The notes beneath the pieces are model-generated. The model was not told where the DNA came from and did no database searches. It saw nothing but the letters and a program-made list of their open reading frames with translations. Position numbers and translations under genes: made by a program. This document shows, in pieces, positions 5,117-31,701 of a stretch of 64,000 bases of DNA. Each line of letters opens with the position of its first letter. Within the stretch, counting starts at the first letter, position 1. Location: the IMG/VR virus record IMGVR_UViG_3300027759_000045, positions 124,001-188,000 of that record, one strand, 5' to 3'.

Positions 5117-5121
5117 AGTGT

Positions 5122-12564: not shown

Positions 12565-13576
12565 TTCCTACACCAGTTGGCAACCCTTAGAAGAAGTTAT
12601 TGTAGGTCGTGCATACAGCCCAGACTACTTTGACTTCATTGAAGATCCGCAAGTGCGTAACCAATTACAACAGATCTTACACGAAACAGAAGAAGATTTA
12701 AATAACTTGCAAAAGACAATTGAAACTTATGGTGCTCGTGTACGTAGACCTAATTTGCCGCCCAAGGATCAATTTGTATGGTGGCAAACAGAAAACGGTG
12801 GTGCACCGCTGCCTCCACTGACTCCGCGTGATTGGCAAATCAGTCTAGGACAAAAGTTACTGCGTGTGTTGCCAATGGAAGAACTGGACGACATTTGTGC
12901 AGAATATGCAGACCAAGTGATCAGTCCACACAACGGTCGCTGGGATGCTGACTGCATTCTTAACCAAGCAAGTGCCAGTTGTATTGTACGTGTAGGGCGT
13001 GACGTATTCTTTGACAACAGTGATTATCTAAAGCCAGAACAAACTCGTTGGATTGTGGACAACTGCTTGGGCCCAGAGTATCGTATACACGAAGCAGTAA
13101 CAGACGGCCACGGCGATGCTGTGTTTGCTATTCTCAAGCCTGGTGTTATCTTGTCCAGCAAGCACGATGTTAACTTAGACTTAGCCAAGGACTTTCCAGG
13201 GTGGGAAGTGCTAAAGATTTGGGACTCAAGTATCTGGGCCGCAATGGAAATAGGCAAGTTCAAATACGAACAAAGTCCCGGAGCATGGTATGTGCAAGGG
13301 CAAACGCCCACACAGGAGTTTACCAAGTTTGTAGACACCTACTTGAACAAGTGGACCGGCTTTGTTGCTGAAACAGTATTTGATGTCAACTGTTTAGTGC
13401 TGGATGAAGAAAATGTTATCTTCAGTGCTTACAATAGAGATGTGTTTGATTTCTGTAAACAGCATCGTATTAATCCTATTATCAGTGAACTGCGTCACAG
13501 TTACTTCTGGGACGGTGGCATCAGTTGTTGTACACAGGATTTGACACGCCGAGGCGGTTTAGAAACATATCTATAA
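12557..13576 (+). CDS. Amidinotransferase (glycine/inosamine-phosphate amidinotransferase superfamily)
   Basis: N-terminal NSYTSWQPLEEVIVG, TPRD, HGDAVF..LKPG, FDVNCL and C-terminal GGISCCTQDL.R with the catalytic Cys. Confidence 0.85.
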   Translation: MINSYTSWQPLEEVIVGRAYSPDYFDFIEDPQVRNQLQQILHETEEDLNNLQKTIETYGARVRRPNLPPKDQFVWWQTENGGAPLPPLTPRDWQISLGQKLLRVLPMEELDDICAEYADQVISPHNGRWDADCILNQASASCIVRVGRDVFFDNSDYLKPEQTRWIVDNCLGPEYRIHEAVTDGHGDAVFAILKPGVILSSKHDVNLDLAKDFPGWEVLKIWDSSIWAAMEIGKFKYEQSPGAWYVQGQTPTQEFTKFVDTYLNKWTGFVAETVFDVNCLVLDEENVIFSAYNRDVFDFCKQHRINPIISELRHSYFWDGGISCCTQDLTRRGGLETYL

Positions 13577-14607
13577 TGTTTGTCATTCCAATTGCTAACC
13601 AGCACTCGTACAATTCAATACCGCGTAATGCAGATTTAAAATTAACCATTGACAATCACTGCAATGCGCCCAGTCGCCAATTGGTTATAGACTGGAAAGG
13701 TGATTGTTTTGTATGTGGGTGCGAAGCATGGTTACCGATCAGTGTGGGACAAATTTCAGACTTTGATTCATTGGCCAGTGTATGGAATAGTAATACAGCG
13801 TTGGCATTACAAGCAGATATTGATTCCGGTGCATATACACATTGTGCTGTTGATCGGTGTGGTGTGGTACATGCCAGCAAGATAGACAAAACACACGTGG
13901 TCAGTATCAATGTTGACGAAAGTTGTAACCTACGTTGTCCCAGTTGCAGACCTGCGGCAATAATGATCAACTCAGGTCCCGAATATGATCAAAAACTAGC
14001 ACAGGTACAACACATACGCCGATTGTTAGAAGAGTTTGCAGAGCCCTGTCACATTGTGATGAGTGGCAACGGAGATCCATTGGCCAGTGCTATTATGCGT
14101 CCATTGATACGAGAGTTTCGGCCCGGCCACAATCAAACTATTCGGCTGTTCACCAATGGCCTATTGCTAAAAAAACAACTAGATGATTCTCCTATCCTTG
14201 ATCACATCACACAGTATTTTATCAGCATAGATGCAGGCTCTGCTGGTGTGTATGAACGTGTGAGATTAGGCGGGCAATGGTCTCAATTGATTGCTAACCT
14301 AACTTGGTTGCAAGACACTGCTAAACGTACAGGTGCAGAAGTACTGTTAAAGTTTGTGCTACAACAAGACAACTATCAAGACATGCAGAACTTCTGTCGA
14401 CTATGTGTTGATATGGGCTTTAGTGGTGTTATCAATCGACTAGAAGATTGGGGCACCTGGGCCGATTACGCTGTGCATGATGTGATTGGTAACGCCGAAC
14501 ATACAGATCATCTGGCGGCCATGTATTTCTTAACCAGTGCATACTCAGAGTATGCAGGGCGTATACAGTTTAATCCCAGTCTAGAAGAAATGTGTCATGC
14601 CCAATAG
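13576..14607 (+). CDS. Radical SAM enzyme with N-terminal Cys-rich (SPASM/twitch-like) domain
   Basis: CNLRCPSC, GNGDPL, TNG and ISIDA. ATG 13576 overlaps the previous TAA. Confidence 0.88.
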   Translation: MFVIPIANQHSYNSIPRNADLKLTIDNHCNAPSRQLVIDWKGDCFVCGCEAWLPISVGQISDFDSLASVWNSNTALALQADIDSGAYTHCAVDRCGVVHASKIDKTHVVSINVDESCNLRCPSCRPAAIMINSGPEYDQKLAQVQHIRRLLEEFAEPCHIVMSGNGDPLASAIMRPLIREFRPGHNQTIRLFTNGLLLKKQLDDSPILDHITQYFISIDAGSAGVYERVRLGGQWSQLIANLTWLQDTAKRTGAEVLLKFVLQQDNYQDMQNFCRLCVDMGFSGVINRLEDWGTWADYAVHDVIGNAEHTDHLAAMYFLTSAYSEYAGRIQFNPSLEEMCHAQ

Positions 14608-15385
14608 ACTCAAAACTTCCGCGGCGGTTATCGTCATTGATGCATGGCCAGATCTGGTTGGCCACTGGCCTTATTCAATGTTAAAAAACCTAACAGAGTT
14701 TATTCAACAAGATTTTGTGAAGTGTATAGTAGTCGCATCTTACTCAGAATACACAGTTCACGGAACAACAGCAACGCCGATAGAGTCGCCAATTTGGCAC
14801 AACAGTCGACAGGTTTTCAATCCCGATCTCAATCCTGCTGTTCCGGCCTACACAGGTTCAGCCTGGTTGGCACAAGAACATGCACAGATAATTTCTAACA
14901 ACCATCATGGCCCTGTTGTAAATCAATTTATACTTCATGATACACCGGTCACTAATCCGGCTGTGTTAACTATGTCTCTTAGACAGGATCAGAAAATGTT
15001 TGCGGCCTGGACTCTGGACCAGGTGGTATATTTGCTCAATTCACAGTATCCCGACGTTGAAAATATATATCTGTGTGGTGGATCATTTGAACAGTGTCTA
15101 TCCAATCGACCGGTGGGGGTGAAATCACTGATGGTTGCAATGAATTTAAATCAGTTTAACAATGTTCAACGTTTATTAATTCCACCTAAATGTGTTTACA
15201 CCGACAGTGGCAAATTATTAAATGATGAATTAGAACTGATCGATCCAAACTGGTATTATAATCAAGTACAAGACTTGATTCATGTACAACTCCGACCGTT
15301 GCGTGAACAAACTACTAGTAAAGATGTTCTGGCAGCATTAGATCTTGAACAGATGGCAACCAACAAGCGGCATGGCTTAGACTAG
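14597..15385 (+). CDS. Possible isochorismatase/cysteine-hydrolase-fold protein
   Basis: AAVIVIDAW near the N-terminus and IYLCGGSFEQCL match the family's Asp and G-x4/5-C pattern. Confidence 0.45.
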   Translation: MPNRLKTSAAVIVIDAWPDLVGHWPYSMLKNLTEFIQQDFVKCIVVASYSEYTVHGTTATPIESPIWHNSRQVFNPDLNPAVPAYTGSAWLAQEHAQIISNNHHGPVVNQFILHDTPVTNPAVLTMSLRQDQKMFAAWTLDQVVYLLNSQYPDVENIYLCGGSFEQCLSNRPVGVKSLMVAMNLNQFNNVQRLLIPPKCVYTDSGKLLNDELELIDPNWYYNQVQDLIHVQLRPLREQTTSKDVLAALDLEQMATNKRHGLD

Positions 15386-15407
15386 AAACTAAAAAAGACG
15401 TGGGCTA

Positions 15408-16673
15408 TTATAGGTGTGTCAGCCACGGAAACAACAGTTTCCAATCGGTGCCACGACGGCGATCTATTTCAGTTAGATAAACTTTCAAATCAGCAACACG
15501 TTCTGCGTTGCGCGGTCCTGCCACAATCTGTTTCATAATGCCACGCATGTGTTCTTTAGCACTGACTTCGCTGGGATTGCGTTCTCGCATTGCGGCCAAC
15601 AGACGCTCGAAGTCCTGTTCAAACACACCTGGTCCAAATATGTCTGGAACCATTTCAGGCGGTGTCATTACACTCATGAAACTGTAGCTAATAGGATTCC
15701 ACGGGTTTCGACGATCGTTCCATTCGTTTATCTTTTCTACTAGCTCAGGTGCTGTTTTAATTGTCAATGCCGACACTGCACTGTTCACGCACATCACAAC
15801 CCAGTCTTTATCCAGTAGATATTCCCAGTTTTCTGTCCACTCAGCCAAGTCTAGTCCCCACCGCACATACTCTTCTTGTGGTCCCCAGGCATCTATACTA
15901 CCTGTGATTTGCAATCGTTTTAGTGCGCCAGACTCAACCATCTTGCCAAATCGATCAATGTAGGCTCGGAACTTTTTAGGAGGTACCTTTAGGTTGGTAA
16001 TAATGTTGAATGTGAGTTCGGGATTGGGGTGACTCTCCCAGAAGTCCATGCTGATGTCAAATTCATCCTGGAAGAAAGGCTCGCCGCCTAGTATTTGATA
16101 GTAGCGTATGTGTTTGTAACGATCTTTCTCTTCAAGATAACGCCAAAAGTCTGCTAACATGCGCTCATAGTTGGGATTAGATTGTGTGTTATGCCCAAAG
16201 TTTACATTGCCTTGTGTAAACACACCAAATCGTCGGTTCTCTTCTTCCCATTTTGTACTAAAGTGACTGCCGCAATACAAGCAGGCCATGTTGCATACAT
16301 TGTTGAAATATACTTCTAATATGGTAGGTACAACTTCTAATGTAGCTGGATCTTCAAACAACTCGTGTGGAGTGCGATCTAGGTCATGACGAGCATGCAA
16401 TTGATATTGTCTATCGCTCATGCCGCCGGCTGTTTCAATTTTCTCACAGTATTGACAACCACCCTGTGGCCATTCGCCACGCAACATCATTTGCCTGGCT
16501 TCTATTTTGTTTGGCAGGTTATGAAAACTTTCAAAATTATCCGGAGGTATGGGTTGTTGGTCTGTGCGATGGCAACTGGCACTTGTGCCTTGATTTAAGT
16601 ACACAGTACTCCATGCCCACTTGAGCAAGCATCCTGTGTCTGTTTTGATTGGAAATACTTGTTTATCAGTCAT
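15408..16673 (-). CDS. Radical SAM enzyme with N-terminal twitch-like domain
   Basis: CLLKW...SCHR...CQYC, then CNMACLYC and GGEPF. Confidence 0.9.
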   Translation of the reverse strand: MTDKQVFPIKTDTGCLLKWAWSTVYLNQGTSASCHRTDQQPIPPDNFESFHNLPNKIEARQMMLRGEWPQGGCQYCEKIETAGGMSDRQYQLHARHDLDRTPHELFEDPATLEVVPTILEVYFNNVCNMACLYCGSHFSTKWEEENRRFGVFTQGNVNFGHNTQSNPNYERMLADFWRYLEEKDRYKHIRYYQILGGEPFFQDEFDISMDFWESHPNPELTFNIITNLKVPPKKFRAYIDRFGKMVESGALKRLQITGSIDAWGPQEEYVRWGLDLAEWTENWEYLLDKDWVVMCVNSAVSALTIKTAPELVEKINEWNDRRNPWNPISYSFMSVMTPPEMVPDIFGPGVFEQDFERLLAAMRERNPSEVSAKEHMRGIMKQIVAGPRNAERVADLKVYLTEIDRRRGTDWKLLFPWLTHL

Positions 16674-18181
16674 GAGCAGACTTTTACTCCGTATAATTGT
16701 TCAAATCTATCTGCGTCTGCACGATCATTTACCATGGGTTCACCACGTATGTTAAGACTTGTGTTAAGCAACATGGGACAACCTGTGTTCTTGTACCATT
16801 CTTCTAGCAGTTGTCTTATTCCGGAGCCATCCTTGGGAACAGTCTGTACCCTACTAGTGCCATCCCTATGAACGATAGCAGGAAATATGTGAGGATGCCT
16901 ACAGCGAGCGATGACTTGCATATACCTACTGTTATGGAAGCCATGAGGCATATCAAAATACATATCAACATGTTCCTCCAAAATGATTGGCGCAAATGGT
17001 CTGAATTGCTGTCGTCTTTTAATATCATTTACACGGTCCTTTATATCTGCACCACGCGGGTCTGCCAATAAACTACGATTGCCTAGAGCTCTAGGGCCAA
17101 ACTCTGCACGACCACTAGCAACACCCACAATTTTATCACGTAGCAAACAAGCCACAACGTCGTTGACAGGATAAGCACCAGGAATATCACTACCCAGATA
17201 GGCGTTGGTCCAATGTATCTGTTTTCCGTATGCCAGTGCTGCTGCCCCCAGGCTACTGCCAGCATCACCAGGACAAGGCATAATCCAAATGTTATCAAAG
17301 TATTCTCCTAGGTTGCGGTTAGCACTACAGTTGAGAGCAACACCGCCCATGTAGACCAAGTTGTTACTCCAGCCAAAGTCCCTGGCTCTACGCATTACTG
17401 AGTTGATCAGCTGTTCTGCTATGGCCTGTGCGCCAGCGGCAATATCAAACTCCGTTAAGCCTTCTAAGTACTGGTTGTCTATGCCGGTGTGCAGATTTTC
17501 ACGAAAGCGTATGGTGTCTACATCTTCTACCAATGCTTGCATTTTAACAGCGTGACCAGCATTGCCATATGCAGCCATGCCCATCAAGATATATTCTTCA
17601 TCTAATGGACGTAGGCCAACGCTGCCAGTAACTGCAGAGTAGAACAGTCCAATTGAATGTGGATAATGTTGTGTCCAAAGTTTTTTATACTTTGCCATGC
17701 CTTTTGAATCATATTCTGCTCCCCAGATAGTTACGGTGTCTAATTCGCCAATTGCATCAATTACAACCACTGTGGCCCTGTTATAGGGGCTGGATTGGAA
17801 TCCAGCGGCGGCGTGACTATGATGATGGGACATATATTTTCTAGGACATTGTAGTAGTCGCTGCCGATGAACAGTATCAGATAAGTGTTTACGCAGATAC
17901 TGATCCAAAGTAAAATTCCCAAAATTAAAGGCTTCCTCATATTGTCCCGAATATAGTTGTTGTAGTTTTTTGACCCACGGACGTTCATAGTATGCAATCA
18001 CATCCGGAGTTGCGTATGACATTGCTTCTGCAATGATTGAATCATTTAGATGTGCGTCGTTTTTGTTTTTGCTGTAGCGTTCTGCATGGCCAGCAAAAAG
18101 GACGCTGCCGTCAGACTGAATTACACTGACGGCAGCATCGTGAAATCCAGCACTGATACCAAAATATGTTTTCAACTTCAT
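16670..18181 (-). CDS. Carbamoyltransferase, NodU/CmcH/TobZ family
   Basis: HDAAV, ERYSKNK, HHHSHAAA, DAIGE, GGVALNC, GDAG, GRAEFGPRALGNRS, FRPFAP and LNTSLN.RGEP. Confidence 0.95.
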   Translation of the reverse strand: MKLKTYFGISAGFHDAAVSVIQSDGSVLFAGHAERYSKNKNDAHLNDSIIAEAMSYATPDVIAYYERPWVKKLQQLYSGQYEEAFNFGNFTLDQYLRKHLSDTVHRQRLLQCPRKYMSHHHSHAAAGFQSSPYNRATVVVIDAIGELDTVTIWGAEYDSKGMAKYKKLWTQHYPHSIGLFYSAVTGSVGLRPLDEEYILMGMAAYGNAGHAVKMQALVEDVDTIRFRENLHTGIDNQYLEGLTEFDIAAGAQAIAEQLINSVMRRARDFGWSNNLVYMGGVALNCSANRNLGEYFDNIWIMPCPGDAGSSLGAAALAYGKQIHWTNAYLGSDIPGAYPVNDVVACLLRDKIVGVASGRAEFGPRALGNRSLLADPRGADIKDRVNDIKRRQQFRPFAPIILEEHVDMYFDMPHGFHNSRYMQVIARCRHPHIFPAIVHRDGTSRVQTVPKDGSGIRQLLEEWYKNTGCPMLLNTSLNIRGEPMVNDRADADRFEQLYGVKVCS

Positions 18182-18279
18182 TTGTAGATAAAAGGATCTC
18201 GCTTGCGTAGTTCTTTTAGTTTTTTACGATAGCGTATTTCTAAACAAATACGATTGTATAAATTTTTAATCCAGTTCAT
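18178..18279 (-). CDS. 33-aa basic peptide ending DPFIYK, coupled to the carbamoyltransferase (not in ORF track)
   Basis: Hand translation MNWIKNLYNRICLEIRYRKKLKELRKRDPFIYK*. It starts 1 nt after the upstream stop, has SD AAGGA, and overlaps the downstream gene by ATGA. Confidence 0.75.
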   Translation of the reverse strand: MNWIKNLYNRICLEIRYRKKLKELRKRDPFIYK

Positions 18280-18280
18280 A

Positions 18281-19348
18281 TCATGTCCTTTGTATTATTT
18301 TAATTTGTTGGTCTGCATAATCTGCATCTGTCCAGTTATAACTGTATGTAGCTGTTGCATTGCTGGTGCGTATTTTATACACATCAAGATGCGTTCCCAA
18401 CATGTTCCATATATCTACATAGTTATCTGTTCCAAAACTACGGATCAAATCTACCTGAGCCACCTGCGGATGTCCAATGGTCAATGTTTTATCGTCTGGA
18501 TCAAATCCATTGTTTATTAACCATGTTCTAAAGTCTGCCAAATGCTTCTTTTGCCAGTCATGTGGGCCAGGATTGTTTGCCCACTCTATATCAAAATCAC
18601 CAGCAGCTTCAAGTTGACTACGCATGGTTGTGGTTGTTAAAGTATCAATGATCATATTGGGATTATAGTTGGCCTCGTCCACAAATACTTCCCAATGGTG
18701 TTTGCCCACAGCCTTATTTACGCCTACAAAAACTCCACCCAGTGGCCTATTGATTGTTTCAATTCCAAACAGTTCATAATCTTGTTTATCTAATAGAAAT
18801 CGTGGTGCGTGTAACCAACACATGAGTTGACTAGGTCGTTGCCATGCAGGTGCATAAAGTGCTTTGCGCATACTGAGAACAAGACTTTCGTATTCATGAC
18901 ATAACAAATTTAATTGTCTTATATGCCATCGTGTAGTAGAATCTGCTTTGGTATAAAAAGGACTCATTGCACCCGATACACCTTGTAAATCTTCAAAGTA
19001 ACGATGTAGATAGTTTAACTTATCATGTATTAACGTTGTATCAGGCGTAATAGTATTAGCAGTTGAGAAATAATCGTCAATTTGATATCCAATGTTGGCA
19101 GCATTAATGGCAGCAATACTACTGTTCATTTGTTCAGTCAAGTATTCTGCGTTGCGCTGACTTTGTGTAAATCCAAAAAAACAGTAATTCTTTTCCAAAT
19201 GATAATTGTCACGGATCAGGGTATTTAATGCGGCAAGCCATTTGTGACTCAGGCTGTTGTCCGCCACATCTATATGCACAGTGAGCAGACTATCTTTTCC
19301 GCGCAGGTCTATTTCAATTTGATCTATCATTGTATATTCATCCACCAT
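18281..19348 (-). CDS. Hypothetical protein
   Basis: 355-aa ORF in the operon; LNYLHRYFEDLQG and LNLLCHEYE His/Glu helices could bind metal. Confidence 0.75.
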   Translation of the reverse strand: MVDEYTMIDQIEIDLRGKDSLLTVHIDVADNSLSHKWLAALNTLIRDNYHLEKNYCFFGFTQSQRNAEYLTEQMNSSIAAINAANIGYQIDDYFSTANTITPDTTLIHDKLNYLHRYFEDLQGVSGAMSPFYTKADSTTRWHIRQLNLLCHEYESLVLSMRKALYAPAWQRPSQLMCWLHAPRFLLDKQDYELFGIETINRPLGGVFVGVNKAVGKHHWEVFVDEANYNPNMIIDTLTTTTMRSQLEAAGDFDIEWANNPGPHDWQKKHLADFRTWLINNGFDPDDKTLTIGHPQVAQVDLIRSFGTDNYVDIWNMLGTHLDVYKIRTSNATATYSYNWTDADYADQQIKIIQRT

Positions 19349-21826: not shown

Positions 21827-23106
21827 TTAATTGCTCTTAGTTCAGGTAATACATCAAGCACATGTTCTCGTCTAATGCTGTCAAGCTCGTGCGTCTTGCG
21901 CCAAAAAGTGTCTAGTAGATGTGTGTTGTCAGTGCTGTTCATAAATGTAATAGCACTTTCAAATCCCACAGTGGCACGATTTAATTGATCCAATGGGCGC
22001 AACCATTCTAAGTGTTGCTCATACTTAGATTGTATTTGTTGTTTGTACTCTGCAGGTGCGATGTCGATACGCAAGTATGCAGGGTCTTGAAGTATGTTCA
22101 CGTTGAGATCCTGAGGTTTTAATAAACCTTTTTCTACCCAGTCTCTGTGAAAGTCAGGAAGATGCAGTGCATTCATTATACTCAATGTAGGACTGATATA
22201 AAAGTCTACCCTAGGGCATATTTCCATCATCTGTCTACGATTAGATTCTACCACAGCCCAGTCTGTGCCTTTACGTATATACTCACCTCGTGGACCCGAC
22301 GCATCAAGGCTTGCACCAACTGCCACGCTGTCAAATTTGCGCCAGTAATCAAACACTGTGCGGTCTTTAAGACGTGTCTGTGTAAAGTTAGTATTGTATA
22401 TTAGTCTAACATCAAAGCGACCACGACGTTCTAGTTCTTCTAGAATCCGGTAGTGCTCTTCCATCATCAAGGGTTCGCCGCCGGCAAAGTAAATCTGCTC
22501 CACGTGATCAATATGCTCAATCAGCTGTTCCCACAGATCAGTGGCAAAACGACCAGCATAGTTAAGAGGTTTGTTTTGACTGGCCCAAGCGGATCCTGCT
22601 AATTCTGTTTGATCTTTGTACCAACTTGAACTAAAGATATGCCCACAACTACGGCAACTTAAATTGCAAAGATTACTAAACCGCAGATCCCAATAGGTCA
22701 TTTCAAATTGATCAACATGCCCAGCAGCATCTGTATTGTCTACACGGGCAACATGGTGCCCGTGGTGCTTGTTGGCACTTTTACGTCCACTGAAAAATCC
22801 TGATTCTTCCTGTTCGTAGCAACGGCCACAGGTAGGATTAGGTGTTTCGGCCAGCATGTCAACTCTGAGTTGTTTTTGTTCGGCACTGTTCCATATTTCT
22901 GCCAGTGTGTTTGATCTGCAGTTGCCAATTTGGCCCACACCCATTTCGGCATGACAGCAAGGATATGCTTCGCCTGTGGGATATGCGTGTAAGTGTATCC
23001 AAGGGTAGATGCAAAATGTTTTGGAATCTTTTAATAAAAATTCTTCACGTTCTGAAAGTTCTGTTGGACGTACTAAATCTGTTGAATTATATTTGTATTG
23101 AGTCAT
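21823..23106 (-). CDS. Radical SAM enzyme with N-terminal twitch-like domain
   Basis: CIYPW...PCC...IGN...CGRC, then CNLSCRSC and GGEPL. Confidence 0.9.
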   Translation of the reverse strand: MTQYKYNSTDLVRPTELSEREEFLLKDSKTFCIYPWIHLHAYPTGEAYPCCHAEMGVGQIGNCRSNTLAEIWNSAEQKQLRVDMLAETPNPTCGRCYEQEESGFFSGRKSANKHHGHHVARVDNTDAAGHVDQFEMTYWDLRFSNLCNLSCRSCGHIFSSSWYKDQTELAGSAWASQNKPLNYAGRFATDLWEQLIEHIDHVEQIYFAGGEPLMMEEHYRILEELERRGRFDVRLIYNTNFTQTRLKDRTVFDYWRKFDSVAVGASLDASGPRGEYIRKGTDWAVVESNRRQMMEICPRVDFYISPTLSIMNALHLPDFHRDWVEKGLLKPQDLNVNILQDPAYLRIDIAPAEYKQQIQSKYEQHLEWLRPLDQLNRATVGFESAITFMNSTDNTHLLDTFWRKTHELDSIRREHVLDVLPELRAIK

Positions 23107-24445
23107 ACCATGTTGATAATGTTACGTCTAACGAATAACTGTCTTTAAATGTATCTTTAAAACTTTTTCCGCGACGTTGATCGTACTGTGTGTAAAACTG
23201 CTTAAAATCATTGTGTAACTTAGGCATATCAAATGCGTCTGAATGCGGAGTTTTTACTACATCTAAATAATCAATTAATCTCTGTAGGTGATTAATCTCG
23301 TGTTCGTGCAGTATGTCAGGAACCGCTTTCCATCGCTGTAGGAAATTAGATAAGTCAAGCATGTGACGTGTAAGCAATGCCCGGGGCAATACCAGTGGAC
23401 TTTGAAAACTGGGAAATCTCAATATATTTAATGTAAAGTTAACACGTTCACGACCATACTTTGATTTAAGTTGTACTACGTAATGCAGAAGCATTGGCAA
23501 CGTTGTCAAGCACAATGCATTAATGGTGGCCATTATGTGTACTGCACCCACATGACTGTCTAGTAATTTAACTACATTTTTTTCCCAAGCAGGATAATCT
23601 AGTCCATCTCGAATATATTCAGCGGCAGCGCCAACAGCTTCCATGGATGTGTAAATTTCCACATCCAATCCTTGAGTGCTTTCAATTAATCTATCCACGT
23701 CAACATCTGCACCAAGATTAGAATTAATTGCTAACCGGGTGGTCGATCTACCGGGATTGTTTTTAAACCAGTCAATCAATTTCCATGTCTCGGCACTCAT
23801 TAGCGGTTCGCCGCCGGTGATTCTCAGTTCTTGGAGTGTTTGGTGAAGGTCAGTTTCCCACCATTTAAAAAACGCTTCAACATAGGGATTAGTTTCACCA
23901 AGCCGGTATAGTTGACTGCTAGCGTGAGCATGAGTAAAGTGGTTACGCCCATCAGACACCAGGCCGACATAAGGTCCGCTTCGCTTGATATCATTGACCC
24001 ATGTGCTACTGAAAGCAGGGTTACAATAGCTACAAGCAAATTGGCAAGTGCGATCGAACGCAATTTCAAGTGTGCGAAGATTGACATCTTCGGTGTGTGG
24101 GGTGTTATATGCTTCATCTAAGGCCTTTATAGGATAAATTTTACTTTTGTACACACGGTCTGATACGGAATCTTTGCCCATGTCTTCGATCTTCCAACAG
24201 TATTCACAACCTGAGGGACGTTTCCCTTCCAACATCAGTCGTCGATCATCTTTTTTCTTTGCAGTGTTATGCAATGCAGATGGATTAATTTTTAATTGTT
24301 CAACATCGATTGCGTGTGCTGGAGGGTGATGACAGCTGGTGGTCTGGCCCGAACCTAGCCATATGGTGGCATTGTACCATTTGGCCGCACAAAAACTTGC
24401 ACTCTTGGTGTCTAAAATTTCATGTTTAAAGTCTAAATCGTTCAT
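23087..24445 (-). CDS. Radical SAM enzyme with N-terminal twitch-like domain
   Basis: CAAKW...SCHHPP...CEYC, then CQFACSYC and GGEPL. Start at ATG 24445 (MNDLDF) is preferred to avoid a 119-nt overlap. Confidence 0.88.
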   Translation of the reverse strand: MNDLDFKHEILDTKSASFCAAKWYNATIWLGSGQTTSCHHPPAHAIDVEQLKINPSALHNTAKKKDDRRLMLEGKRPSGCEYCWKIEDMGKDSVSDRVYKSKIYPIKALDEAYNTPHTEDVNLRTLEIAFDRTCQFACSYCNPAFSSTWVNDIKRSGPYVGLVSDGRNHFTHAHASSQLYRLGETNPYVEAFFKWWETDLHQTLQELRITGGEPLMSAETWKLIDWFKNNPGRSTTRLAINSNLGADVDVDRLIESTQGLDVEIYTSMEAVGAAAEYIRDGLDYPAWEKNVVKLLDSHVGAVHIMATINALCLTTLPMLLHYVVQLKSKYGRERVNFTLNILRFPSFQSPLVLPRALLTRHMLDLSNFLQRWKAVPDILHEHEINHLQRLIDYLDVVKTPHSDAFDMPKLHNDFKQFYTQYDQRRGKSFKDTFKDSYSLDVTLSTWYDSIQI

Positions 24446-25565
24446 TGATAAATTGTTGGAAACGGTTGGGAAATTCTTTGCGAGTCTGTGTGCGCACTTC
24501 TGCAAGATGTTGTTGATTGTATTTACACACATTATAGCATTCATTTAGGAAACTTGCAAGATCTTGTTGGCACAAATCATTAACTATCATTGTTATTCTT
24601 TCCATTCGATCTTGATGATTATCAATAGAATCAAAACTTTCATCAATCACATGTCCAAATGTTTGAAATCCCAACTTGTGTATATCTCGATAAAATCCTA
24701 CACTGGTAGCACAGATCCACGGATGCCCCATGGCCAATGGTTTGGCAATTTTTTCTGTTCTAAAACTATACGGATATTCAAACACAGTTTCAGTTACTAA
24801 ACTAAAGTAGGTGTCAATATACGGAGCAGGTTCTAAATAAATTTCTCCCCATTTGCTGCCAAACAGTTCGTTCTTGGCAAATTTGTGTGGGTAGTCGATC
24901 ACAATACTATTATTTTTAAAAAATTCAAATTCATATTCTGAAGGCAAGTGTTTAATAGATGCAGTTTTTCCCAATAGATCTTGCCTGTTTTCTATTAGTG
25001 TAAAATGCCTGCTGCCACCGGCACGACCATCTAACAGTGTCCAAAGTGCATGATCCAACAGATTCATTTGTCGAAATCTTTCAAGTAGATATTTTCTATG
25101 TGATCTTGCTCGCCCATTTAGAAATAAAAATTTGTAGGGTTTGTTGTGTTTGGCAAAGATTTCATCAGTACGTTGTTGTGCCTGAATGTTTTCATCATAG
25201 TCCAAGATGTGTGTAATAAAATGTTCGTGCAATAGATATGGATATTGAGATTCCATCTCGCCTCCAGTTAGCAACAATAGTTGACCTGACAGTACCAGGT
25301 CCTCAATCTTTAACACATGCAATTGATCCAGTATAGTTTTAGAACCTTCGGCGCTGTTGCCAAATATCACAGTTATGGTTGGATCCTGTGTCATTGATCT
25401 GACACGATCTGTGTGTTCTACCATTTGCTTACGGCCTAATAGATAGATTGAATTGGACTGCGTTTCGTGCAGGCCCAAATCCCAGAATTCATCATCCGAG
25501 TAAGGTTTCATTATACTGTAAACCTCGCTCATTGTGTCAATAATAAACTTACGATTGCCGAGCAT
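24426..25565 (-). CDS. Glycosyltransferase-like protein (TEK family), paralog 3
   Basis: FLFLNGRARSHR; ETVFEYPYSFRTEKIAKPLAMGHPW...GFQTF...DESFD. Confidence 0.55.
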   Translation of the reverse strand: MLGNRKFIIDTMSEVYSIMKPYSDDEFWDLGLHETQSNSIYLLGRKQMVEHTDRVRSMTQDPTITVIFGNSAEGSKTILDQLHVLKIEDLVLSGQLLLLTGGEMESQYPYLLHEHFITHILDYDENIQAQQRTDEIFAKHNKPYKFLFLNGRARSHRKYLLERFRQMNLLDHALWTLLDGRAGGSRHFTLIENRQDLLGKTASIKHLPSEYEFEFFKNNSIVIDYPHKFAKNELFGSKWGEIYLEPAPYIDTYFSLVTETVFEYPYSFRTEKIAKPLAMGHPWICATSVGFYRDIHKLGFQTFGHVIDESFDSIDNHQDRMERITMIVNDLCQQDLASFLNECYNVCKYNQQHLAEVRTQTRKEFPNRFQQFINERFRL

Positions 25566-26949
25566 GGTACTCGCATTCTGCCCACCAAGACCGCATTTCA
25601 GGAAAAGCTGTTAAAAAGTCAGTTCCTCTACGCCGATCATGTTCAGCAAAGAAACGATGGAAATCTGCTCGGGCAGTTGAATTATCTTTATGTTGTCCTT
25701 CACGCATCCACGCAACATCACGTTCTAGGCGTTGCACTTCGTAATCTTTAAATCCGTGCAGAGGGTTAGCTTCTGTAACCATGTTGGCCAACATGTAATC
25801 TCTAGCACGTTCTAACTGTTGTGCATAACTTTCTGGAAGTATTTGTAAACTTTGCCAAGCAGGTTCACGTAGTACTGGAGTATCAAACCACACACGTTGA
25901 TAAGTTGTTGAATATGTTTTTCTTAATTCCAAAATCCATTTTAACAGTGCAGGCAAACCAGTGACAGTTAAATTGTTCATAGTAATAATAAACGTCAGAC
26001 TATTGCGATAAGGAATATCACGTAAGAATTCTTCAACATTATTGGCCATGCGACCATAGTCCAGTCCGTGACGTAAGTATTCTGCTTGTGCAGGTATACC
26101 AGAGTCTAGGCTGACGTACTGCATGAAGTGTTCAATGTTGGGCGTACAAAGACGTTTTACATAACTTATGTACTTTTTAAACAGCGCATCTTCCACTGAA
26201 AAGTTTGACGTTACATTCAGGTGTAGTTTAGGATTAGGGTGTTCTAATACATAATCAAACACCCGATAAGTGTTTCGATCCATTAATGGTTCACCACCAG
26301 TCATACGAAAGTGCTCTAGCTGTGGATACAGGGTGGGCCACCATTCCCAAAATGCATCTACATAAGGGTTAGCTTCCCTGACAGGAATAGGTTTGCGATT
26401 GCCTACAAAATGCTCCGGCGCATTGTGTGGTTTACTGGTGGGATATGCACCGTGTCGTTCTACTTCTTCACCCCAACTACTACTGAACTGCGGTGAACAA
26501 TAACTGCACTTTAGATTACAAGCGTGGTTAAAATTAACTTCTACATAACTGGGAACAACGTCATCCTCATTGCCTACACTGTTTTTAATCTTTTCAAAAT
26601 CCACCGCAGCCCAGGCTTCTCCAGAACGATAGTGGCGATCACTCAGTTTGTCCAAGTTTTCCATATTCCAGCAATACTGACACTCCGTGGGCTTTTCACC
26701 GCGAATCATCATCATACGTTGTTGTTTTTTGTGTTCAGTGTTGTGTATTCCACCAGTGTGTTGCAAATCATCTGCAGTGATCTGATGCAACGGCGGGTGG
26801 TAACAACTGTTGTTGAGTCCTGTAGGCAGGTGCAGACTTACCTGTTTCCACTTGGCCAAGCATAATGCAGGACCAAGATCCTCTGCCATCTGTTCAGCAG
26901 AGTTTAAGAATCGACTTTTGTTGTCTACTGTTTCATCACCTTTGTTCAT
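25549..26949 (-). CDS. Radical SAM enzyme with N-terminal twitch-like domain
   Basis: CLAKW...SCYHPP...CQYC, then CNLKCSYC and GGEPL; close paralog of 23087-24445. Confidence 0.9.
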   Translation of the reverse strand: MNKGDETVDNKSRFLNSAEQMAEDLGPALCLAKWKQVSLHLPTGLNNSCYHPPLHQITADDLQHTGGIHNTEHKKQQRMMMIRGEKPTECQYCWNMENLDKLSDRHYRSGEAWAAVDFEKIKNSVGNEDDVVPSYVEVNFNHACNLKCSYCSPQFSSSWGEEVERHGAYPTSKPHNAPEHFVGNRKPIPVREANPYVDAFWEWWPTLYPQLEHFRMTGGEPLMDRNTYRVFDYVLEHPNPKLHLNVTSNFSVEDALFKKYISYVKRLCTPNIEHFMQYVSLDSGIPAQAEYLRHGLDYGRMANNVEEFLRDIPYRNSLTFIITMNNLTVTGLPALLKWILELRKTYSTTYQRVWFDTPVLREPAWQSLQILPESYAQQLERARDYMLANMVTEANPLHGFKDYEVQRLERDVAWMREGQHKDNSTARADFHRFFAEHDRRRGTDFLTAFPEMRSWWAECEYHARQS

Positions 26950-27634
26950 GTAACCATTTCTTCACTGTTGGTTGCAGAAATTCTGCAAATTCTTTGTTAG
27001 CTTGCGGAGTAGGATGTTCATGGCAAAAATATCCGTGTTCTTCCCACCAACACCATTCTTTGATCTGTTCGTCCCAGGCAAAGGTTGCGGCTCGGCCCGG
27101 TACAATTCCATTGCTGTGCATACGCCAGCCCACGTCTGACGCACCCCAGCCATGCTGGAACCATTTGCTATCTAGCTGTGTGGCAATCCACTTTTGCCAG
27201 CTTGCACACAGTACATCAAATCCAAATGCCTGTGCTAGTAACGGATCAACGTCACTGAGCCCGCCAATAAAGGTAATGGGATTGTTCACACGATCACGTA
27301 TCTCACTCATTATAGCATGATTCAGTGCTGTACGTATACTGAACATGTCTTCTTTTTCAATCCATTCATGCGGCGGGGCATTCTTTATGCGCCCATAATC
27401 ACGTCCGGGTTCGGTCCATATCCATACTACAGGAACGTTGTCGGGCACACGCATGGCAACCAGTCTATCCAAACAGGCTAGATTACCCTGCCCCGGAGCC
27501 AAACAGTGCTGATAAGGCCAAGGCCAGTGATCTGCCAGTCGTTCATCGCCGGGCAATGGCTGTTGATTACCTTTGTCATAATTGTCATTAGTAAAGCCTT
27601 TTAGTGCCCAACTGTCCCCGGCAAAGATATACAT
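26936..27634 (-). CDS. SGNH/GDSL-like hydrolase or acyltransferase
   Basis: N-terminal FAGDSW, APGQGN block and C-terminal HPT..AN..FA. Confidence 0.55.
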   Translation of the reverse strand: MYIFAGDSWALKGFTNDNYDKGNQQPLPGDERLADHWPWPYQHCLAPGQGNLACLDRLVAMRVPDNVPVVWIWTEPGRDYGRIKNAPPHEWIEKEDMFSIRTALNHAIMSEIRDRVNNPITFIGGLSDVDPLLAQAFGFDVLCASWQKWIATQLDSKWFQHGWGASDVGWRMHSNGIVPGRAATFAWDEQIKEWCWWEEHGYFCHEHPTPQANKEFAEFLQPTVKKWLHEQR

Positions 27635-28497
27635 TACTTTAGATCCTTTTTCTGTTGTGCAAAGATTTGATCACCATTGTACTGTTCTGGACAAAACTTA
27701 CACTGATCAATGGGCTGGTCTAGACTGTTCACAAACTGCTGTTTAGCTGTGCCACTGTCAGTGATCTTCAAGGGTCTGTAACTCAGCATGAGTTCACGGT
27801 CCTCTGCGCTGAGTGTGAGTGAGTGCTGTTGATCAAATTCGGGCAACACTGCCGCAACACCGCACTTGTACAGCTCACCACGTATGAAATGGTGGCAGGT
27901 TTTCATGTGGCAAATGTCATGTGCTCGAGCTACGTCACTTTGGTGCAGTGTTAGTGCGCCGTCTGTTTTGACAATGGCACCTTGGTGGAACCACCAATTG
28001 TATTCTATTTTGATGCGTACCCCACGTGCATCAGTAATGGTCATGTACTGTTGATAGGGGTTGTCTGTGTTAAACGTCACAGTGTGCGGGGCTTGACCAA
28101 AGTCTCGAACCTTTTGTATGATTTCTGATTTGTGCTGTTTGTTGTGTATGCCAACCCACAGCTCAATGTTGCGATGTTGCTCTAGTATGGGATAAAGATC
28201 GGCATGTCGATCCAATCTAAAGCCATTGCTGATAATTCTTATTTTCTTTCCAGGCCATAGTTGATTTATGCCCTGCACCCAGGCCAAGAACGTGGGGTTC
28301 AGTAGCGGCTCGCCGCCCAGGATGCCAATACTGCCAATATCAACTTGTTCGGCCCACTGCTGATATACTTCAGCATAGTCACTCCAGCGTTGATAGCCCG
28401 TGAAGTTGTAGTCATTGAAACGATTGCAACCTGCGCATGCTAGATTGCAAACATTAATGATATAAAACTCTGCGTAGGGTATGTGTAGCTTAGGCAT
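27634..28497 (-). CDS. Radical SAM enzyme with C-terminal Cys-rich domain
   Basis: CNLACAGC, GGEPLL and SNG; C-terminal C...C...LYKC...CKFC. Confidence 0.88.
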   Translation of the reverse strand: MPKLHIPYAEFYIINVCNLACAGCNRFNDYNFTGYQRWSDYAEVYQQWAEQVDIGSIGILGGEPLLNPTFLAWVQGINQLWPGKKIRIISNGFRLDRHADLYPILEQHRNIELWVGIHNKQHKSEIIQKVRDFGQAPHTVTFNTDNPYQQYMTITDARGVRIKIEYNWWFHQGAIVKTDGALTLHQSDVARAHDICHMKTCHHFIRGELYKCGVAAVLPEFDQQHSLTLSAEDRELMLSYRPLKITDSGTAKQQFVNSLDQPIDQCKFCPEQYNGDQIFAQQKKDLK

Positions 28498-31394: not shown

Positions 31395-31701
31395 CTGTAG
31401 GCGGAATACCGTTTGAGTGTCGGTCTGTTGTTTTGTCAACATCTTGGAAAAGTCGTTTTTCCTGTGCTGTCAGTGTGTCTTTGTGTGTTCTGCGAGGATT
31501 ACCGCACAATGGACATTGTGGATTACCACAGTCCATCACATGATGTTTGGCCAATCGGTGTGGTTCTTTTACTGCTAGATCTTTGTTGGTCATGCCGTGT
31601 GCTTTGGCAATCTTAACTTGTCGGGCCACTGCATTTTCATCTTTTAATAGACGTTTACTTTTTTTAAATTTATCTTCTTCTTTACTCAAAGCAATCTCCA
31701 A
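31387..31701 (-). CDS. Small basic protein with putative Zn-binding Cys motif
   Basis: CGNPQCPLCGNPR. The true start may be TTG 31689, which has a GGAG SD and overlaps the upstream TGA. Confidence 0.7.
   Translation of the reverse strand: MEIALSKEEDKFKKSKRLLKDENAVARQVKIAKAHGMTNKDLAVKEPHRLAKHHVMDCGNPQCPLCGNPRRTHKDTLTAQEKRLFQDVDKTTDRHSNGIPPTDE

What the first reader, a model, noticed from the sequence alone, without database searches (positions are those of the whole stretch)
13576..28497. Eight radical SAM paralogs, seven with the auxiliary Cys domain placed before the CxxxCxxC motif
Seen: CxxxCxxC motifs in the ORFs at 13576, 15408, 19327, 20606, 21823, 23087, 25549 and 27634. Seven carry an N-terminal Cys-rich segment, in two clear subfamilies (C..PW...CC...CxxC at 19327, 20606 and 21823; C..KW...SC.H/SCHR...CxYC at 15408, 23087 and 25549) plus a divergent form at 13576. 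Established: SPASM/twitch domains normally follow the radical SAM core, as they do here only at 27634. Inference: a permuted family expanded by duplication, each copy acting at a different position or on a different substrate. This would place a large Fe-S and SAM demand on the infected cell.
Basis: partly seen in the sequence, partly recalled or inferred. Interest (0 to 1): 0.8.

Follow-up and report, generated by a model that had tools for sequence, protein, structure and literature searches.

The report
Phage radical-SAM array in glycosylation island
A freshwater giant phage carries eight radical SAM enzyme genes, six from an already catalogued but never studied family whose extra iron-sulfur domain sits in front of the catalytic core; they lie among sugar-transferring enzymes in a gene module shared by hundreds of uncultured phages.

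Summary
Eight ORFs each carry one CX3CX2C motif, and seven have a conserved four-Cys domain upstream of it.

- The eight genes are three families, not eight copies of one. Six (15408, 19327, 20606, 21823, 23087, 25549) match NCBIfam NF033640, "twitch domain-containing radical SAM protein" (N_Twi_rSAM), full length at 224-403 bits against a cutoff of 170. The "permuted" architecture is therefore already curated. I found no paper on the family.
- 13576 is a separate N-terminal-SPASM-like type. 27634 is a small radical SAM enzyme with five conserved C-terminal Cys and no SPASM profile hit.
- The six paralogs are only 22-31% identical to each other. Each has its own orthologue clade (65-78% identity) in related phage contigs, so the duplications are ancient and the set is inherited together.
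- In 80 IMG/VR loci the family always occurs in arrays of 2-8 copies, most often 5-6. Partner genes are a conserved unknown protein (65 of 80 loci), GT8-like glycosyltransferases (57), GT-B glycosyltransferases (56) and a carbamoyltransferase (47).
- In the window, NDP-sugar epimerase/dehydratase and DegT aminotransferase genes lie nearby.

Best reading: a multi-step set of radical enzymes that tailors a phage-made glycan. The acceptor and the chemistry are unknown. This is a new member of a known but uncharacterised kind.

The parts
13576..14607 (+). A-type radical SAM enzyme with an N-terminal SPASM-like four-Cys domain. Not a member of NF033640. Sporadic accessory gene of the module.
   Evidence: Pfam SPASM at residues 29-95 (26.8 bits) and Radical_SAM at 115-272. 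NF033640 scores only 35 bits. The N-twitch-only HMM gives 12.6 bits. C29, C47, C90 and C95 are conserved in 8 of 8 homologues. Present in 7 of 80 viral loci.
15408..16673 (-). N-twitch radical SAM paralog B (B/F/G superclade).
   Evidence: NF033640 at 224 bits, full length. Cys at 15, 34, 73, 76 and CX3CX2C at 127. Its only orthologue among the fetched loci is in L006. Absent from L001.
16670..18181 (-). Carbamoyltransferase (NodU/CmcH type). Its stop overlaps the start of B by 4 nt.
   Evidence: Pfam Carbam_trans_N at 109 bits and Carbam_trans_C at 165 bits. Lies beside family members in 47 of 80 viral loci. In the first set of loci (genome contigs, related phage contigs and the window) it was found in 13.
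18281..19348 (-). Conserved module protein of unknown function (p18281).
   Evidence: No Pfam, PHROG or NCBIfam hit. Present in 46 of 80 viral loci.
19327..20625 (-). N-twitch radical SAM paralog C.
   Evidence: NF033640 at 283 bits. Cys at 10, 28, 29, 81, 84 and CX3CX2C at 134. Has its own starred orthologue clade.
20606..21826 (-). N-twitch radical SAM paralog D.
   Evidence: NF033640 at 351 bits. Pfam SPASM at residues 9-78 (24.6 bits). Has its own starred clade.
21823..23106 (-). N-twitch radical SAM paralog E, the best match to the family model. This is the paralog I modelled.
   Evidence: NF033640 at 403 bits. Pfam SPASM at residues 32-97 (43.8 bits). AlphaFold2 pLDDT 95.3. The core (residues 135-393) aligns to BlsE, anSME and DesII at Z about 12.6-12.9.
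23087..24544 (-). N-twitch radical SAM paralog F. Its true start is probably a later ATG.
   Evidence: NF033640 at 291 bits over residues 49-469. Cys at 52, 71, 113, 116 and CX3CX2C at 167. The orthologous gene called in L001 is 450 aa.
24426..25565 (-). GT-B glycosyltransferase paralog.
   Evidence: Member of alignment A2, with invariant R, E-K, P, G, T, N. The family model folds as GT-B.
25549..26949 (-). N-twitch radical SAM paralog G.
   Evidence: NF033640 at 302 bits. Cys at 30, 49, 90, 93 and CX3CX2C at 144. 34.6% identical to a Ralstonia phage RsoM2USA protein.
26936..27634 (-). Unknown 232-aa protein that accompanies H.
   Evidence: No family hit. 84% identical orthologue in L005. Present in 3 of 80 viral loci.
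27634..28497 (-). H-type small radical SAM enzyme with CX3CX2C at residue 17 and five conserved C-terminal Cys. Accessory gene of the module.
   Evidence: Pfam Radical_SAM at 37 bits and no SPASM hit. C196, C201, C212, C266 and C269 are conserved in homologues down to 26% identity. Present in 5 of 80 viral loci.
28490..29449 (-). GT-B glycosyltransferase paralog.
   Evidence: Member of A2; 311 bits to the A2 HMM.
10278..11393 (+). GT-B glycosyltransferase paralog.
   Evidence: Member of A2.
11377..12564 (+). GT-B glycosyltransferase paralog (the one modelled).
   Evidence: AlphaFold2 pLDDT 82.5. All top Foldseek PDB hits are GT-B enzymes: SenB, T4 beta-glucosyltransferase, PglA, SdgB and TarM.
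12557..13576 (+). Highly conserved module protein of unknown function (p12557).
   Evidence: Hits only PHROG 25854, function unknown. 86% identical in L001. Present in 21 of 80 viral loci.
30134..31060 (-). Most constant partner of the array (p30134). Function unknown. Has an invariant D-x-D.
   Evidence: Present in 65 of 80 viral loci. More than 8000 metagenomic relatives, most about 80% identical. 51 invariant columns. No PDB profile hit.
31686..32459 (-). GT8-like (GT-A fold) glycosyltransferase.
   Evidence: The A4 profile hits glycogenin at E 2.7e-5 over the first 110 positions. Present in 57 of 80 viral loci.
32443..33240 (-). Second GT8-like paralog.
   Evidence: Same cluster and alignment as 31686. 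Present in 55 viral loci.
5454..6422 (+). NAD-dependent NDP-sugar epimerase/dehydratase.
   Evidence: Pfam Epimerase at 152 bits and GDP_Man_Dehyd at 112 bits.
6481..7479 (+). DegT/DnrJ/EryC1-type sugar aminotransferase.
   Evidence: Pfam PF01041 at 190.8 bits.
7448..10279 (-). 943-aa protein with about six 'PDPxxPPYIYVFGNQW' repeats and a C-terminal p30134-like domain.
   Evidence: Sequence. Clusters with p30134. Relatives in 47 viral loci.

Best explanation
The locus is a typical copy of a widespread, conserved glycosylation and glycan-tailoring module of uncultured, mostly large phages.

The enzymes (shown by sequence):
- Six genes encode members of the curated but biochemically uncharacterised family NF033640.
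- Their architecture is an N-terminal twitch-type domain with four invariant Cys (C-x18-C-x~41-CxxC), a long linker helix, a canonical CX3CX2C/GGE radical SAM core, and a variable helical C-terminal domain.

How the enzymes probably work (inferred):
- The four Cys hold a fully ligated auxiliary [4Fe-4S] cluster, as in BtrN.
- That cluster serves as an electron conduit for a radical started when 5'-deoxyadenosyl abstracts a hydrogen atom.

Why I think they work as a set (shown):
- The six paralogs are ancient and individually conserved.
- They are co-inherited as a set of about five or six.
- They sit in one tightly overlapping operon with GT-B and GT8-like glycosyltransferases and a carbamoyltransferase, next to NDP-sugar dehydratase and aminotransferase genes.

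Proposed function (inferred): each paralog carries out a different radical edit on sugar residues of a phage-built glycan or glycoconjugate. Candidate reactions are oxidation to a keto sugar, epimerisation, deoxygenation or C-C bond formation. The divergent C-terminal domain would set the specificity.

The acceptor is unknown. It could be virion or tail-fibre protein, the host envelope, or DNA. A conserved position just downstream of tail-fibre-like genes favours a virion component only weakly.

The two other radical SAM genes (13576 and 27634) are sporadic accessory enzymes of the same module.
For: Family membership and cluster site:
- NF033640 scores of 224-403 bits over the full length.
- Pfam SPASM hits N-terminal to the core.
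- Invariant C32, C51, C93 and C96 plus CX3CX2C and GGE in 143 domains.
- BtrN's auxiliary cluster has Cys4 ligation (PMC10337720).
- AlphaFold2 model with pLDDT 95.3.
- The best structural matches are SPASM/twitch-group or sugar-acting radical SAM enzymes: BlsE, anSME, DesII, SkfB and CteB, at Z 12.4-12.9.

Ancient, non-redundant paralogs:
- 22-31% identity between paralogs.
- One starred orthologue clade per paralog.
- 65-78% identity to orthologues in L001.
- Identity by region: paralogs 0.26, 0.25, 0.15 against orthologues 0.77, 0.72, 0.64 for twitch, core and C-terminal domain.

The module:
- 80 of 80 IMG/VR loci carry arrays of 2-8 copies, most often 5-6.
- Partners: p30134 in 65, GT8-like in 57, GT-B in 56, carbamoyltransferase in 47.

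Glycan enzymes:
- GT-B fold.
- Glycogenin-like GT8 profile hit at E 2.7e-5.
- Carbamoyltransferase.
- Epimerase/dehydratase and DegT aminotransferase.

Independent bacterial context: a complete Crocinitomicaceae chromosome has three paralogs inside a locus with an epimerase/dehydratase, a carbamoyltransferase, a GT1/GT4 enzyme and a sulfotransferase. GT1 genes recur in 12 loci.

Operon structure: stop and start codons overlap by 1-22 nt along 15408-33240 (coordinates).

Possible expression: lake metatranscriptome contigs at 90-95% identity map onto D, E and F. This is weak evidence.
Against: - No substrate, product or cluster has been observed. Everything about function rests on gene context.
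- Structural Z-scores do not separate sugar-acting from peptide-acting radical SAM enzymes.
- Some bacterial arrays have no glycosyltransferase nearby. Examples are the Bacteriovoracaceae chromosome and an Oligoflexia contig beside Fur and a Gld-like ABC transporter.
- The commonest fusion partners of the family are TPR and Sel1 repeats, which bind proteins.
- The most constant partner, p30134, has no recognisable fold or family.
- The AlphaFold model has no metal sites, and I could not measure Cys geometry.
Confidence: 0.55

Rival explanations
1. The N-twitch enzymes are protein or peptide maturases of the anSME/sactisynthase/RiPP type. Under this reading they modify residues of a virion protein, such as a tail fibre, the 4855-aa protein or the repeat protein at 7448-10279, or a host protein. 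The glycosyltransferases would act on the same protein independently.
For: - Most characterised SPASM-domain radical SAM enzymes belong to RiPP (peptide) pathways (PMC9012708).
- anSMEcpe and CteB are top fold matches, and MftC, anSME and AlbA lead the Swiss-Prot fold search.
- Family members are repeatedly fused to TPR or Sel1 repeats. A secreted Sel1-like 110-aa protein sits inside a bacterial array.
- The module is syntenic with tail-fibre-like genes in 34-41 of 80 loci.
Against: - No RRE or PqqD-like domain was detected by Pfam or NCBIfam.
- I found no conserved small precursor ORF in the phage module.
- Only four auxiliary Cys are present (twitch), not the seven-Cys SPASM site of anSME and sactisynthases.
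- The constant partners are glycosyltransferases and a carbamoyltransferase.
- Fold scores for peptide-acting and sugar-acting enzymes are equal.
Confidence: 0.2
2. The module hypermodifies the phage's DNA or its nucleotide precursors. Under this reading the DNA is glycosylated, and the sugar or base is then edited by radical chemistry, to evade host restriction.
For: - T4 DNA beta-glucosyltransferase is the fourth-best fold match of the GT-B paralog.
- A ThyX gene lies 350 bp upstream of the sugar genes.
- From general knowledge, not tested here: radical SAM, PLP-dependent and glycosyl-transfer enzymes occur in known phage thymidine and cytosine hypermodification pathways.
Against: - The fold match is generic GT-B (TM 0.36-0.41), with many non-DNA enzymes scoring equally.
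- GT8-like enzymes, NDP-sugar dehydratase, DegT and carbamoyltransferase are typical of polysaccharide pathways.
- Bacterial homologues sit in polysaccharide loci.
- I saw no hydroxymethylase, kinase or DNA-binding component in the module.
Confidence: 0.1
3. The array consists of redundant or decaying duplicates, or the Cys patterns arose by chance, and it has no distinct function.
For: None beyond the low identity between paralogs.
Against: - All catalytic and cluster motifs are intact in every copy and in 143 relatives.
- Each paralog is conserved at 65-78% identity in related phages.
- HMM E-values range from 1e-66 to 1e-120.
- Arrays recur in 80 of 80 viral loci.
Confidence: 0.02

Closest known systems
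NCBIfam NF033640, 'twitch domain-containing radical SAM protein' (N_Twi_rSAM)
   Same: Six of the eight proteins match the whole model above the curated cutoff. They share the domain order (four-Cys twitch, then CX3CX2C core, then helical C-terminal domain) and the invariant residues.
   Different: Nothing for the six members. The family itself has no described substrate or reaction, and I found no paper on it. 13576 and 27634 are not members.
BtrN (butirosin 2-deoxy-scyllo-inosamine dehydrogenase), the archetypal twitch radical SAM enzyme
   Same: A single auxiliary cluster site with four Cys. It acts on an amino-sugar-like substrate in a pathway that includes aminotransferases. A proposed role of the auxiliary cluster is as electron acceptor.
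   Different: In BtrN the twitch domain is C-terminal; here it is N-terminal. There is no detectable sequence similarity to any PDB chain. BtrN was not among the listed top fold matches. Activity here is untested.
anSME (anaerobic sulfatase-maturating enzyme) and the SPASM maturases CteB, SkfB and MftC
   Same: Best Foldseek and VIA matches to the radical SAM core (Z about 12.4-12.8). The N-terminal domain hits the same Pfam SPASM model.
   Different: Those enzymes carry a C-terminal seven-Cys SPASM domain with two clusters (SkfB has a twitch domain) and act on peptides or proteins. Here there are four Cys, the domain is N-terminal, and no peptide-recognition domain was detected.
BlsE and DesII (sugar-nucleotide radical SAM enzymes)
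   Same: Top VIA matches (Z 12.9 and 12.6). They act on nucleotide-linked sugars. DesII follows a DegT-family aminotransferase, and a DegT gene is present in this window.
   Different: Only the core aligns, at 13-15% identity. The scores are not distinguishable from peptide-acting relatives.
Aeromonas giant phage vB_AerVM_332-Vera (PMC12390700)
   Same: A freshwater giant phage reported to have eight radical SAM superfamily genes inside its structural-gene cluster. The authors call this 'highly unusual'.
   Different: It belongs to a different phage lineage (Chimallinviridae). Its record is not in the collection I could search, so I could not test whether its genes are homologous to those here.

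Membership tests
NF033640 N_Twi_rSAM | Full-length match to the curated HMM at or above the 170-bit cutoff | tested here: met
   B 224, C 283, D 351, E 403, F 291 and G 302 bits, covering model positions about 2-397 of 398. Not met by A13576 (35 bits, core only) or H27634 (27 bits).
NF033640 N_Twi_rSAM | Four-Cys twitch-type site N-terminal to the CX3CX2C motif | tested here: met
   C32, C93 and C96 are Cys in 143 of 143 domains and C51 in 139 of 143. CX3CX2C is present in 142-143 of 143. The N-twitch-only HMM gives 51-106 bits on the six.
Radical SAM superfamily | CX3CX2C cluster motif, GGE SAM-binding motif and partial TIM-barrel core | tested here: met
   Motifs. Pfam PF04055 hits on seven of the eight proteins; F has none. 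The core aligns to many solved radical SAM enzymes at Z 10-13.
SPASM/twitch domain (Pfam PF13186) | Profile match at or above the gathering score of 21.5 bits | tested here: inconclusive
   Met by E (43.8), A (26.8) and D (24.6). C reaches 21.0, just below. B, F, G and H give no hit. B, F and G are homologous to E over this domain according to the family HMM.
SPASM proper (two auxiliary clusters) | Seven-Cys motif that binds AuxI and AuxII | tested here: not met
   Only four Cys are conserved, plus one semi-conserved neighbour (C50). No CX2CX5CX3C block is present.
Circular permutation of a twitch radical SAM enzyme (the BtrN arrangement) | The N-terminal twitch domain occupies the same spatial position relative to the barrel as the C-terminal twitch of BtrN or MoaA | not testable with these tools
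   Model coordinates are not exposed. Sequential aligners match only the core, residues 135-393.
Auxiliary [4Fe-4S] cluster binding | About 8 Fe and 8 S per monomer, a second EPR or Mossbauer signal, and loss on Cys-to-Ala change | not testable with these tools
   Only the sequence conservation of four Cys is available.
C-terminal twitch/SPASM domain in H27634 | Profile or fold match of the C-terminal Cys region to SPASM/twitch | tested here: inconclusive
   No Pfam SPASM hit. The N-twitch HMM gives E 0.42. Five Cys are conserved down to 26% identity. Only distant Atlas neighbours carry SPASM.
GT-B glycosyltransferases (the four interleaved paralogs) | Two-Rossmann GT-B fold with a conserved nucleotide-sugar-binding C-terminal half | tested here: met
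   AlphaFold2 pLDDT 82.5. The 13 Foldseek hits at E <= 1e-3 are all GT-B enzymes. R, E-K, P and G are invariant. Activity is untested.
GT8 (glycogenin/LgtC-like) for 31686 and 32443 | Profile similarity that includes the nucleotide-binding N-terminal half and the DxD position | tested here: met
   The A4 profile against PDB gives glycogenin at E 2.7e-5, positions 3-110, with 'EAD' aligned to glycogenin 'DAD'. Only the N-terminal half aligns.

The most novel reading that the evidence does not exclude
The set of five or six N-twitch radical SAM enzymes is a self-contained, mobile, multi-step radical pathway shared by hundreds of aquatic phages and some Bdellovibrionota and Bacteroidota. Together with phage glycosyltransferases and the unknown protein p30134, it builds a heavily radical-edited glycan on the virion, for example on tail fibres. 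That would be a kind of viral glycosylation chemistry with no characterised precedent.
Probability: 0.3. Interest if true: 0.8.

Novelty: new member of a known kind. Interest (0 to 1): 0.5.

Why it matters
- **An unstudied family.** It has about 1500 clusters at 50% identity with E <= 1e-30 and at least 583 viral contigs. Its nearest Atlas clusters are almost all viral. No substrate or reaction is known.
- **A working hypothesis.** The family comes in co-inherited sets of five or six non-redundant paralogs inside a glycosyltransferase module. That points to sequential radical tailoring of a glycan, and it gives a defined set of genes to express together.
- **If correct,** it would add a new chemistry to phage surface or DNA decoration, with consequences for host recognition and for how phages evade host defences in lakes and oceans.
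- **For enzymologists,** it offers a natural test of whether a twitch domain works when placed before the core.

Tried and rejected
- **Nucleotide search of the region against phage records:** no match. Protein searches found only distant relatives in Vibrio phages K566 and K567, Ralstonia phage RsoM2USA, a marine single-cell virus and Campylobacter phages.
- **Sequence search of E and of its N-terminal domain against PDB:** nothing.
- **Literature searches** for the family name, the accession, N-terminal twitch, and radical SAM in jumbo phages: no paper on the family. One paper notes eight radical SAM genes in an Aeromonas giant phage. Its record was not available for comparison.
- **Pfam, PHROG and NCBIfam scans of the unknown neighbours:** mostly empty.
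- **Bacterial gene context as a guide to function:** heterogeneous. A solitary gene in Agaribacillus, glycan loci in Bacteroidota, and bare arrays in Bdellovibrionota.
- **An apparent 31-locus partner cluster:** its example ORF (L060 2090-2731, minus strand) lies antisense within a long radical SAM gene (L060 182-2794). I therefore discarded the cluster as an artefact.
- **My first reading of the ABC-transporter partners as Wzm/Wzt exporters:** weakened, because one such locus is Gld-like.
- **p30134:** a homologue search returned only 'hypothetical protein', its profile hit nothing in PDB, and hhalign against the GT8-like family was not significant.
- **Testing the C-terminus of H against the N-twitch HMM:** not significant.
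- **One exact-protein look-up failed**.

Full report
**What is there.** The window is part of a 346,856-bp viral contig, IMGVR_UViG_3300027759_000045. Its closest DNA holders are freshwater and lake metagenomes.
- Tail and baseplate genes at 51-64 kb resemble those of Rak2/GAP32-like jumbo myoviruses only distantly: the baseplate wedge protein is about 34% identical.
- No nucleotide match exists among deposited phage genomes.
Each has a single CX3CX2C motif.

**Three families, not one.** NCBIfam NF033640, "twitch domain-containing radical SAM protein" (short name N_Twi_rSAM, cutoff 170 bits), matches six of the eight proteins end to end:

| ORF | Label | Bits |
|---|---|---|
| 15408 | B | 224 |
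| 19327 | C | 283 |
| 20606 | D | 351 |
| 21823 | E | 403 |
| 23087 | F | 291 |
| 25549 | G | 302 |

- Pfam places a SPASM domain at the N-terminus of E (43.8 bits), D (24.6 bits) and C (21.0 bits, just under the gathering score of 21.5).
- The protein at 13576 (A) scores only 35 bits on NF033640, over its core alone. It does have a Pfam SPASM hit at residues 29-95, ahead of the radical SAM domain. Its homologues conserve C29, C47, C90 and C95. It is a second, distinct family with an N-terminal auxiliary domain.
- The protein at 27634 (H) is a small enzyme with the radical SAM motif at residue 17 and five C-terminal Cys that are conserved down to 26% identity. No SPASM or twitch profile recognises that region.
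- Atlas neighbours of A and of H form separate, mostly viral clusters.

**The auxiliary site.** I aligned 143 family domains from the window, related phage contigs and bacterial genomes.
- The positions equivalent to E-protein C32, C93 and C96 are Cys in all 143, and C51 in 139.
- C50 is Cys in 120 and Ser in the B/F/G clade.
- CX3CX2C and GGE are essentially invariant.
- The pattern C-x18-C-x~41-CxxC has four ligands, so one cluster. That makes it a twitch domain rather than a seven-Cys SPASM domain.
- A review states that SPASM/twitch domains are C-terminal extensions and that a twitch domain binds one auxiliary cluster (PMC9012708). BtrN's auxiliary cluster has Cys4 ligation (PMC10337720).
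- The AlphaFold2 model of E is confident (pLDDT 95.3, pTM 0.92). It shows a short hairpin-and-helix domain (residues about 30-105), a long linker helix (107-124), the barrel core, and a helical C-terminal domain.
- Solved structures align only to the core (residues about 135-393). The best are BlsE (Z 12.9), anSMEcpe (12.8), DesII (12.6), SkfB and CteB. In Swiss-Prot models the best are MftC, anSME and AlbA.
- I could not test whether the N-terminal domain sits where BtrN's C-terminal twitch sits, because model coordinates are not exposed.

**Old paralogs inherited as a set.**
- The six paralogs are 22-31% identical to each other.
- A related 328-kb contig (L001) has orthologues of C, D, E, F and G at 65-78% identity but lacks A, B, H and the ORF at 14597.
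- In a 143-row maximum-likelihood tree, each window paralog falls in its own strongly supported clade with orthologues from related phage-like contigs. B, F and G form one superclade.
- A genuine Bacteriovoracaceae chromosome segment, flanked by the ribosomal protein L21 and L27 genes, obg and lgt, holds eight paralogs. They fall in or beside five of the six window-paralog clades; none groups with B.
- Between paralogs the twitch, core and C-terminal regions are 26%, 25% and 15% identical. Between orthologues they are 77%, 72% and 64%.
- So the duplications long predate this phage, every copy is under constraint, and the C-terminal domain diverges most. This fits different substrates or positions.

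**A conserved module.** The family is large.
- About 9948 clusters at 50% identity score E <= 1e-3, and 1488 score E <= 1e-30.
- Nearest Atlas clusters are almost entirely viral.
- At least 583 IMG/VR contigs encode relatives.
- In the 80 best viral loci (each +-10 kb), the family never occurs singly:

| Copies per locus | 2 | 3 | 4 | 5 | 6 | 7 | 8 |
|---|---|---|---|---|---|---|---|
| Loci | 1 | 3 | 13 | 32 | 27 | 3 | 1 |

Partners in those 80 loci:

| Partner | Loci |
|---|---|
| 308-aa protein at 30134 (p30134) | 65 |
| Family of 31686 and 32443 | 57 |
| Family of 10278, 11377, 24426 and 28490 | 56 |
| Carbamoyltransferase | 47 |
| Protein at 18281 | 46 |
| A-type radical SAM | 7 |
| H-type radical SAM | 5 |

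- Arrays also occur in isolated phages: Vibrio phages K566 and K567 have four copies, and Ralstonia phage RsoM2USA also carries the family.
- A 2025 paper notes eight radical SAM genes inside the structural cluster of Aeromonas giant phage 332-Vera and calls this highly unusual (PMC12390700). I could not test homology because the record was not available.

**What the partners are.**
- The family of four paralogs (alignment A2) has invariant Arg, Glu-Lys, Pro, Gly and Thr. It is modelled at pLDDT 82.5 as a GT-B glycosyltransferase. All significant PDB matches are GT-B enzymes: SenB, T4 beta-glucosyltransferase, PglA, SdgB and TarM.
- The profile of the 31686/32443 family hits glycogenin (GT8) at E 2.7e-5 across the nucleotide-binding half.
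- 16670-18181 is a NodU/CmcH-type carbamoyltransferase.
- Just upstream on the other strand are an NDP-sugar epimerase/dehydratase and a DegT/DnrJ/EryC1 aminotransferase.
- p30134 is very abundant and conserved: more than 8000 relatives, 51 invariant columns and a D-x-D. It has no recognisable family.
- From 33240 down to 15408 the genes share one strand, and their stops and starts overlap by 1-22 nt. This indicates one operon.
- That operon follows tail-fibre-like genes, and the order is conserved in 34-41 of the 80 viral loci.

**Bacterial context.**
- In a complete Crocinitomicaceae chromosome, three paralogs lie within a locus holding an epimerase/dehydratase, a carbamoyltransferase, a GT1/GT4 fusion protein and a sulfotransferase.
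- Across the first set of loci (genome contigs, related phage contigs and the window), recurrent neighbours are GT1/GT4 enzymes (12 loci), carbamoyltransferase (13), epimerase/dehydratase (9), PhyH dioxygenases (9), GDSL enzymes and ABC transporters.
- One MAG contig has a sugar nucleotidyltransferase followed by about eleven radical SAM genes, including B12-dependent ones.
- The picture is mixed, though. Bdellovibrionota arrays lack glycosyltransferases. Many family members are fused to TPR or Sel1 repeats. One bacterial array includes a secreted Sel1-like protein.

**Interpretation.** The most economical reading is that the N-twitch enzymes are tailoring enzymes of a phage-encoded glycosylation pathway. 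Each would perform a different radical reaction on sugar residues, with the Cys4 twitch cluster acting as electron conduit as proposed for BtrN.
- Shown: family membership, the Cys site, the paralog history, the composition of the module, and the glycosyltransferase folds.
- Inferred: cluster binding, the sugar substrate, the chemistry and the acceptor.
- Rivals: protein or peptide maturation (supported by the TPR/Sel1 fusions and the SPASM precedent) and DNA hypermodification (only generic support).
- Expression evidence is weak. Lake metatranscriptome contigs at 90-95% identity map onto D, E and F, and DNA carry-over cannot be excluded.

**Verdict.** The "permuted" architecture is already a curated family, so it is not new as such. 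What the tools add:
- the eight genes are three families;
- the six N-twitch paralogs are an ancient, co-inherited set;
- they belong to a widespread, undescribed phage module built around glycosyltransferases.

I rate it a new member of a known but uncharacterised kind, of moderate interest.

Noticed in passing
window 36730-51297 (-): A single 4855-aa ORF between the baseplate wedge gene and the tail-fibre-like genes. Its only Pfam hits are weak: FG-GAP (37 bits) and CBM_5_12. Probably a giant virion or host-recognition protein.
   Followed up: partly
window 7448-10279 (-): A 943-aa protein with about six tandem repeats of roughly 50 aa containing 'PDPxxPPYIYVFGNQW'. Its C-terminal domain is homologous to p30134 but lacks the D-x-D. 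Relatives occur in 47 of 80 viral loci. No family hit.
   Followed up: partly
window 30134-31060 (-): p30134 is the most constant partner of the radical SAM arrays. It is extremely abundant in metagenomes: more than 8000 hits, most about 80% identical, all annotated 'hypothetical'. It has 51 invariant columns. Its function is unknown and it is a good target for structure prediction.
   Followed up: partly
window 12557-13576 (+): The most conserved protein of the island (86% identical in L001). It ends in a Gly-Gly-x-x-Cys-Cys-Thr motif. From memory only, this resembles the catalytic Cys motif of amidinotransferase/arginine-deiminase-type enzymes. Only a PHROG of unknown function hits it.
   Followed up: no
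window 23087-24544 (-): The F ORF overlaps the upstream GT-B gene by 119 nt, and its first 48 residues lie outside the family model. The real start is probably a later ATG. The orthologous gene called in L001 is 450 aa.
   Followed up: partly
window 4409-5101 (+) and 642-1949 (+): ThyX (flavin-dependent thymidylate synthase, 137 bits) and a DUF2201/VWA putative metallopeptidase lie upstream of the sugar genes.
   Followed up: no
L024, L033 and about 20 further contigs of Elusimicrobia MAG MJ-2014_bin-0981: More than 20 copies of the family in tandem, each fused to long N-terminal TPR arrays (800-1200 aa). They form one lineage-specific clade.
   Followed up: partly
L082 (MAG GCA_027401895.1) 2164-17736: A sugar nucleotidyltransferase gene is followed by about eleven consecutive radical SAM genes. 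They include B12-binding types and a 1106-aa protein with two N-twitch radical SAM units joined by TPR repeats. GDSL and asparagine-synthase genes follow.
   Followed up: partly
L085 (Bacteriovoracaceae UBA6144) 12469-12801: A secreted, Cys-rich, Sel1-like 110-aa protein is encoded in the middle of an eight-paralog bacterial array. It could be an adaptor or a substrate.
   Followed up: no
L004, L005 (contigs binned as 'Haliscomenobacter sp. EUL_031'): These 183-kb and 148-kb contigs carry the whole phage module at 47-84% protein identity to the window. They are probably phage contigs placed by mistake in a bacterial MAG.
   Followed up: partly
window 19327-25300: Contigs from two lake metatranscriptomes map at 90-95% identity onto parts of the D, E and F genes. 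This hints that relatives are transcribed in nature, but DNA carry-over cannot be excluded.
   Followed up: partly
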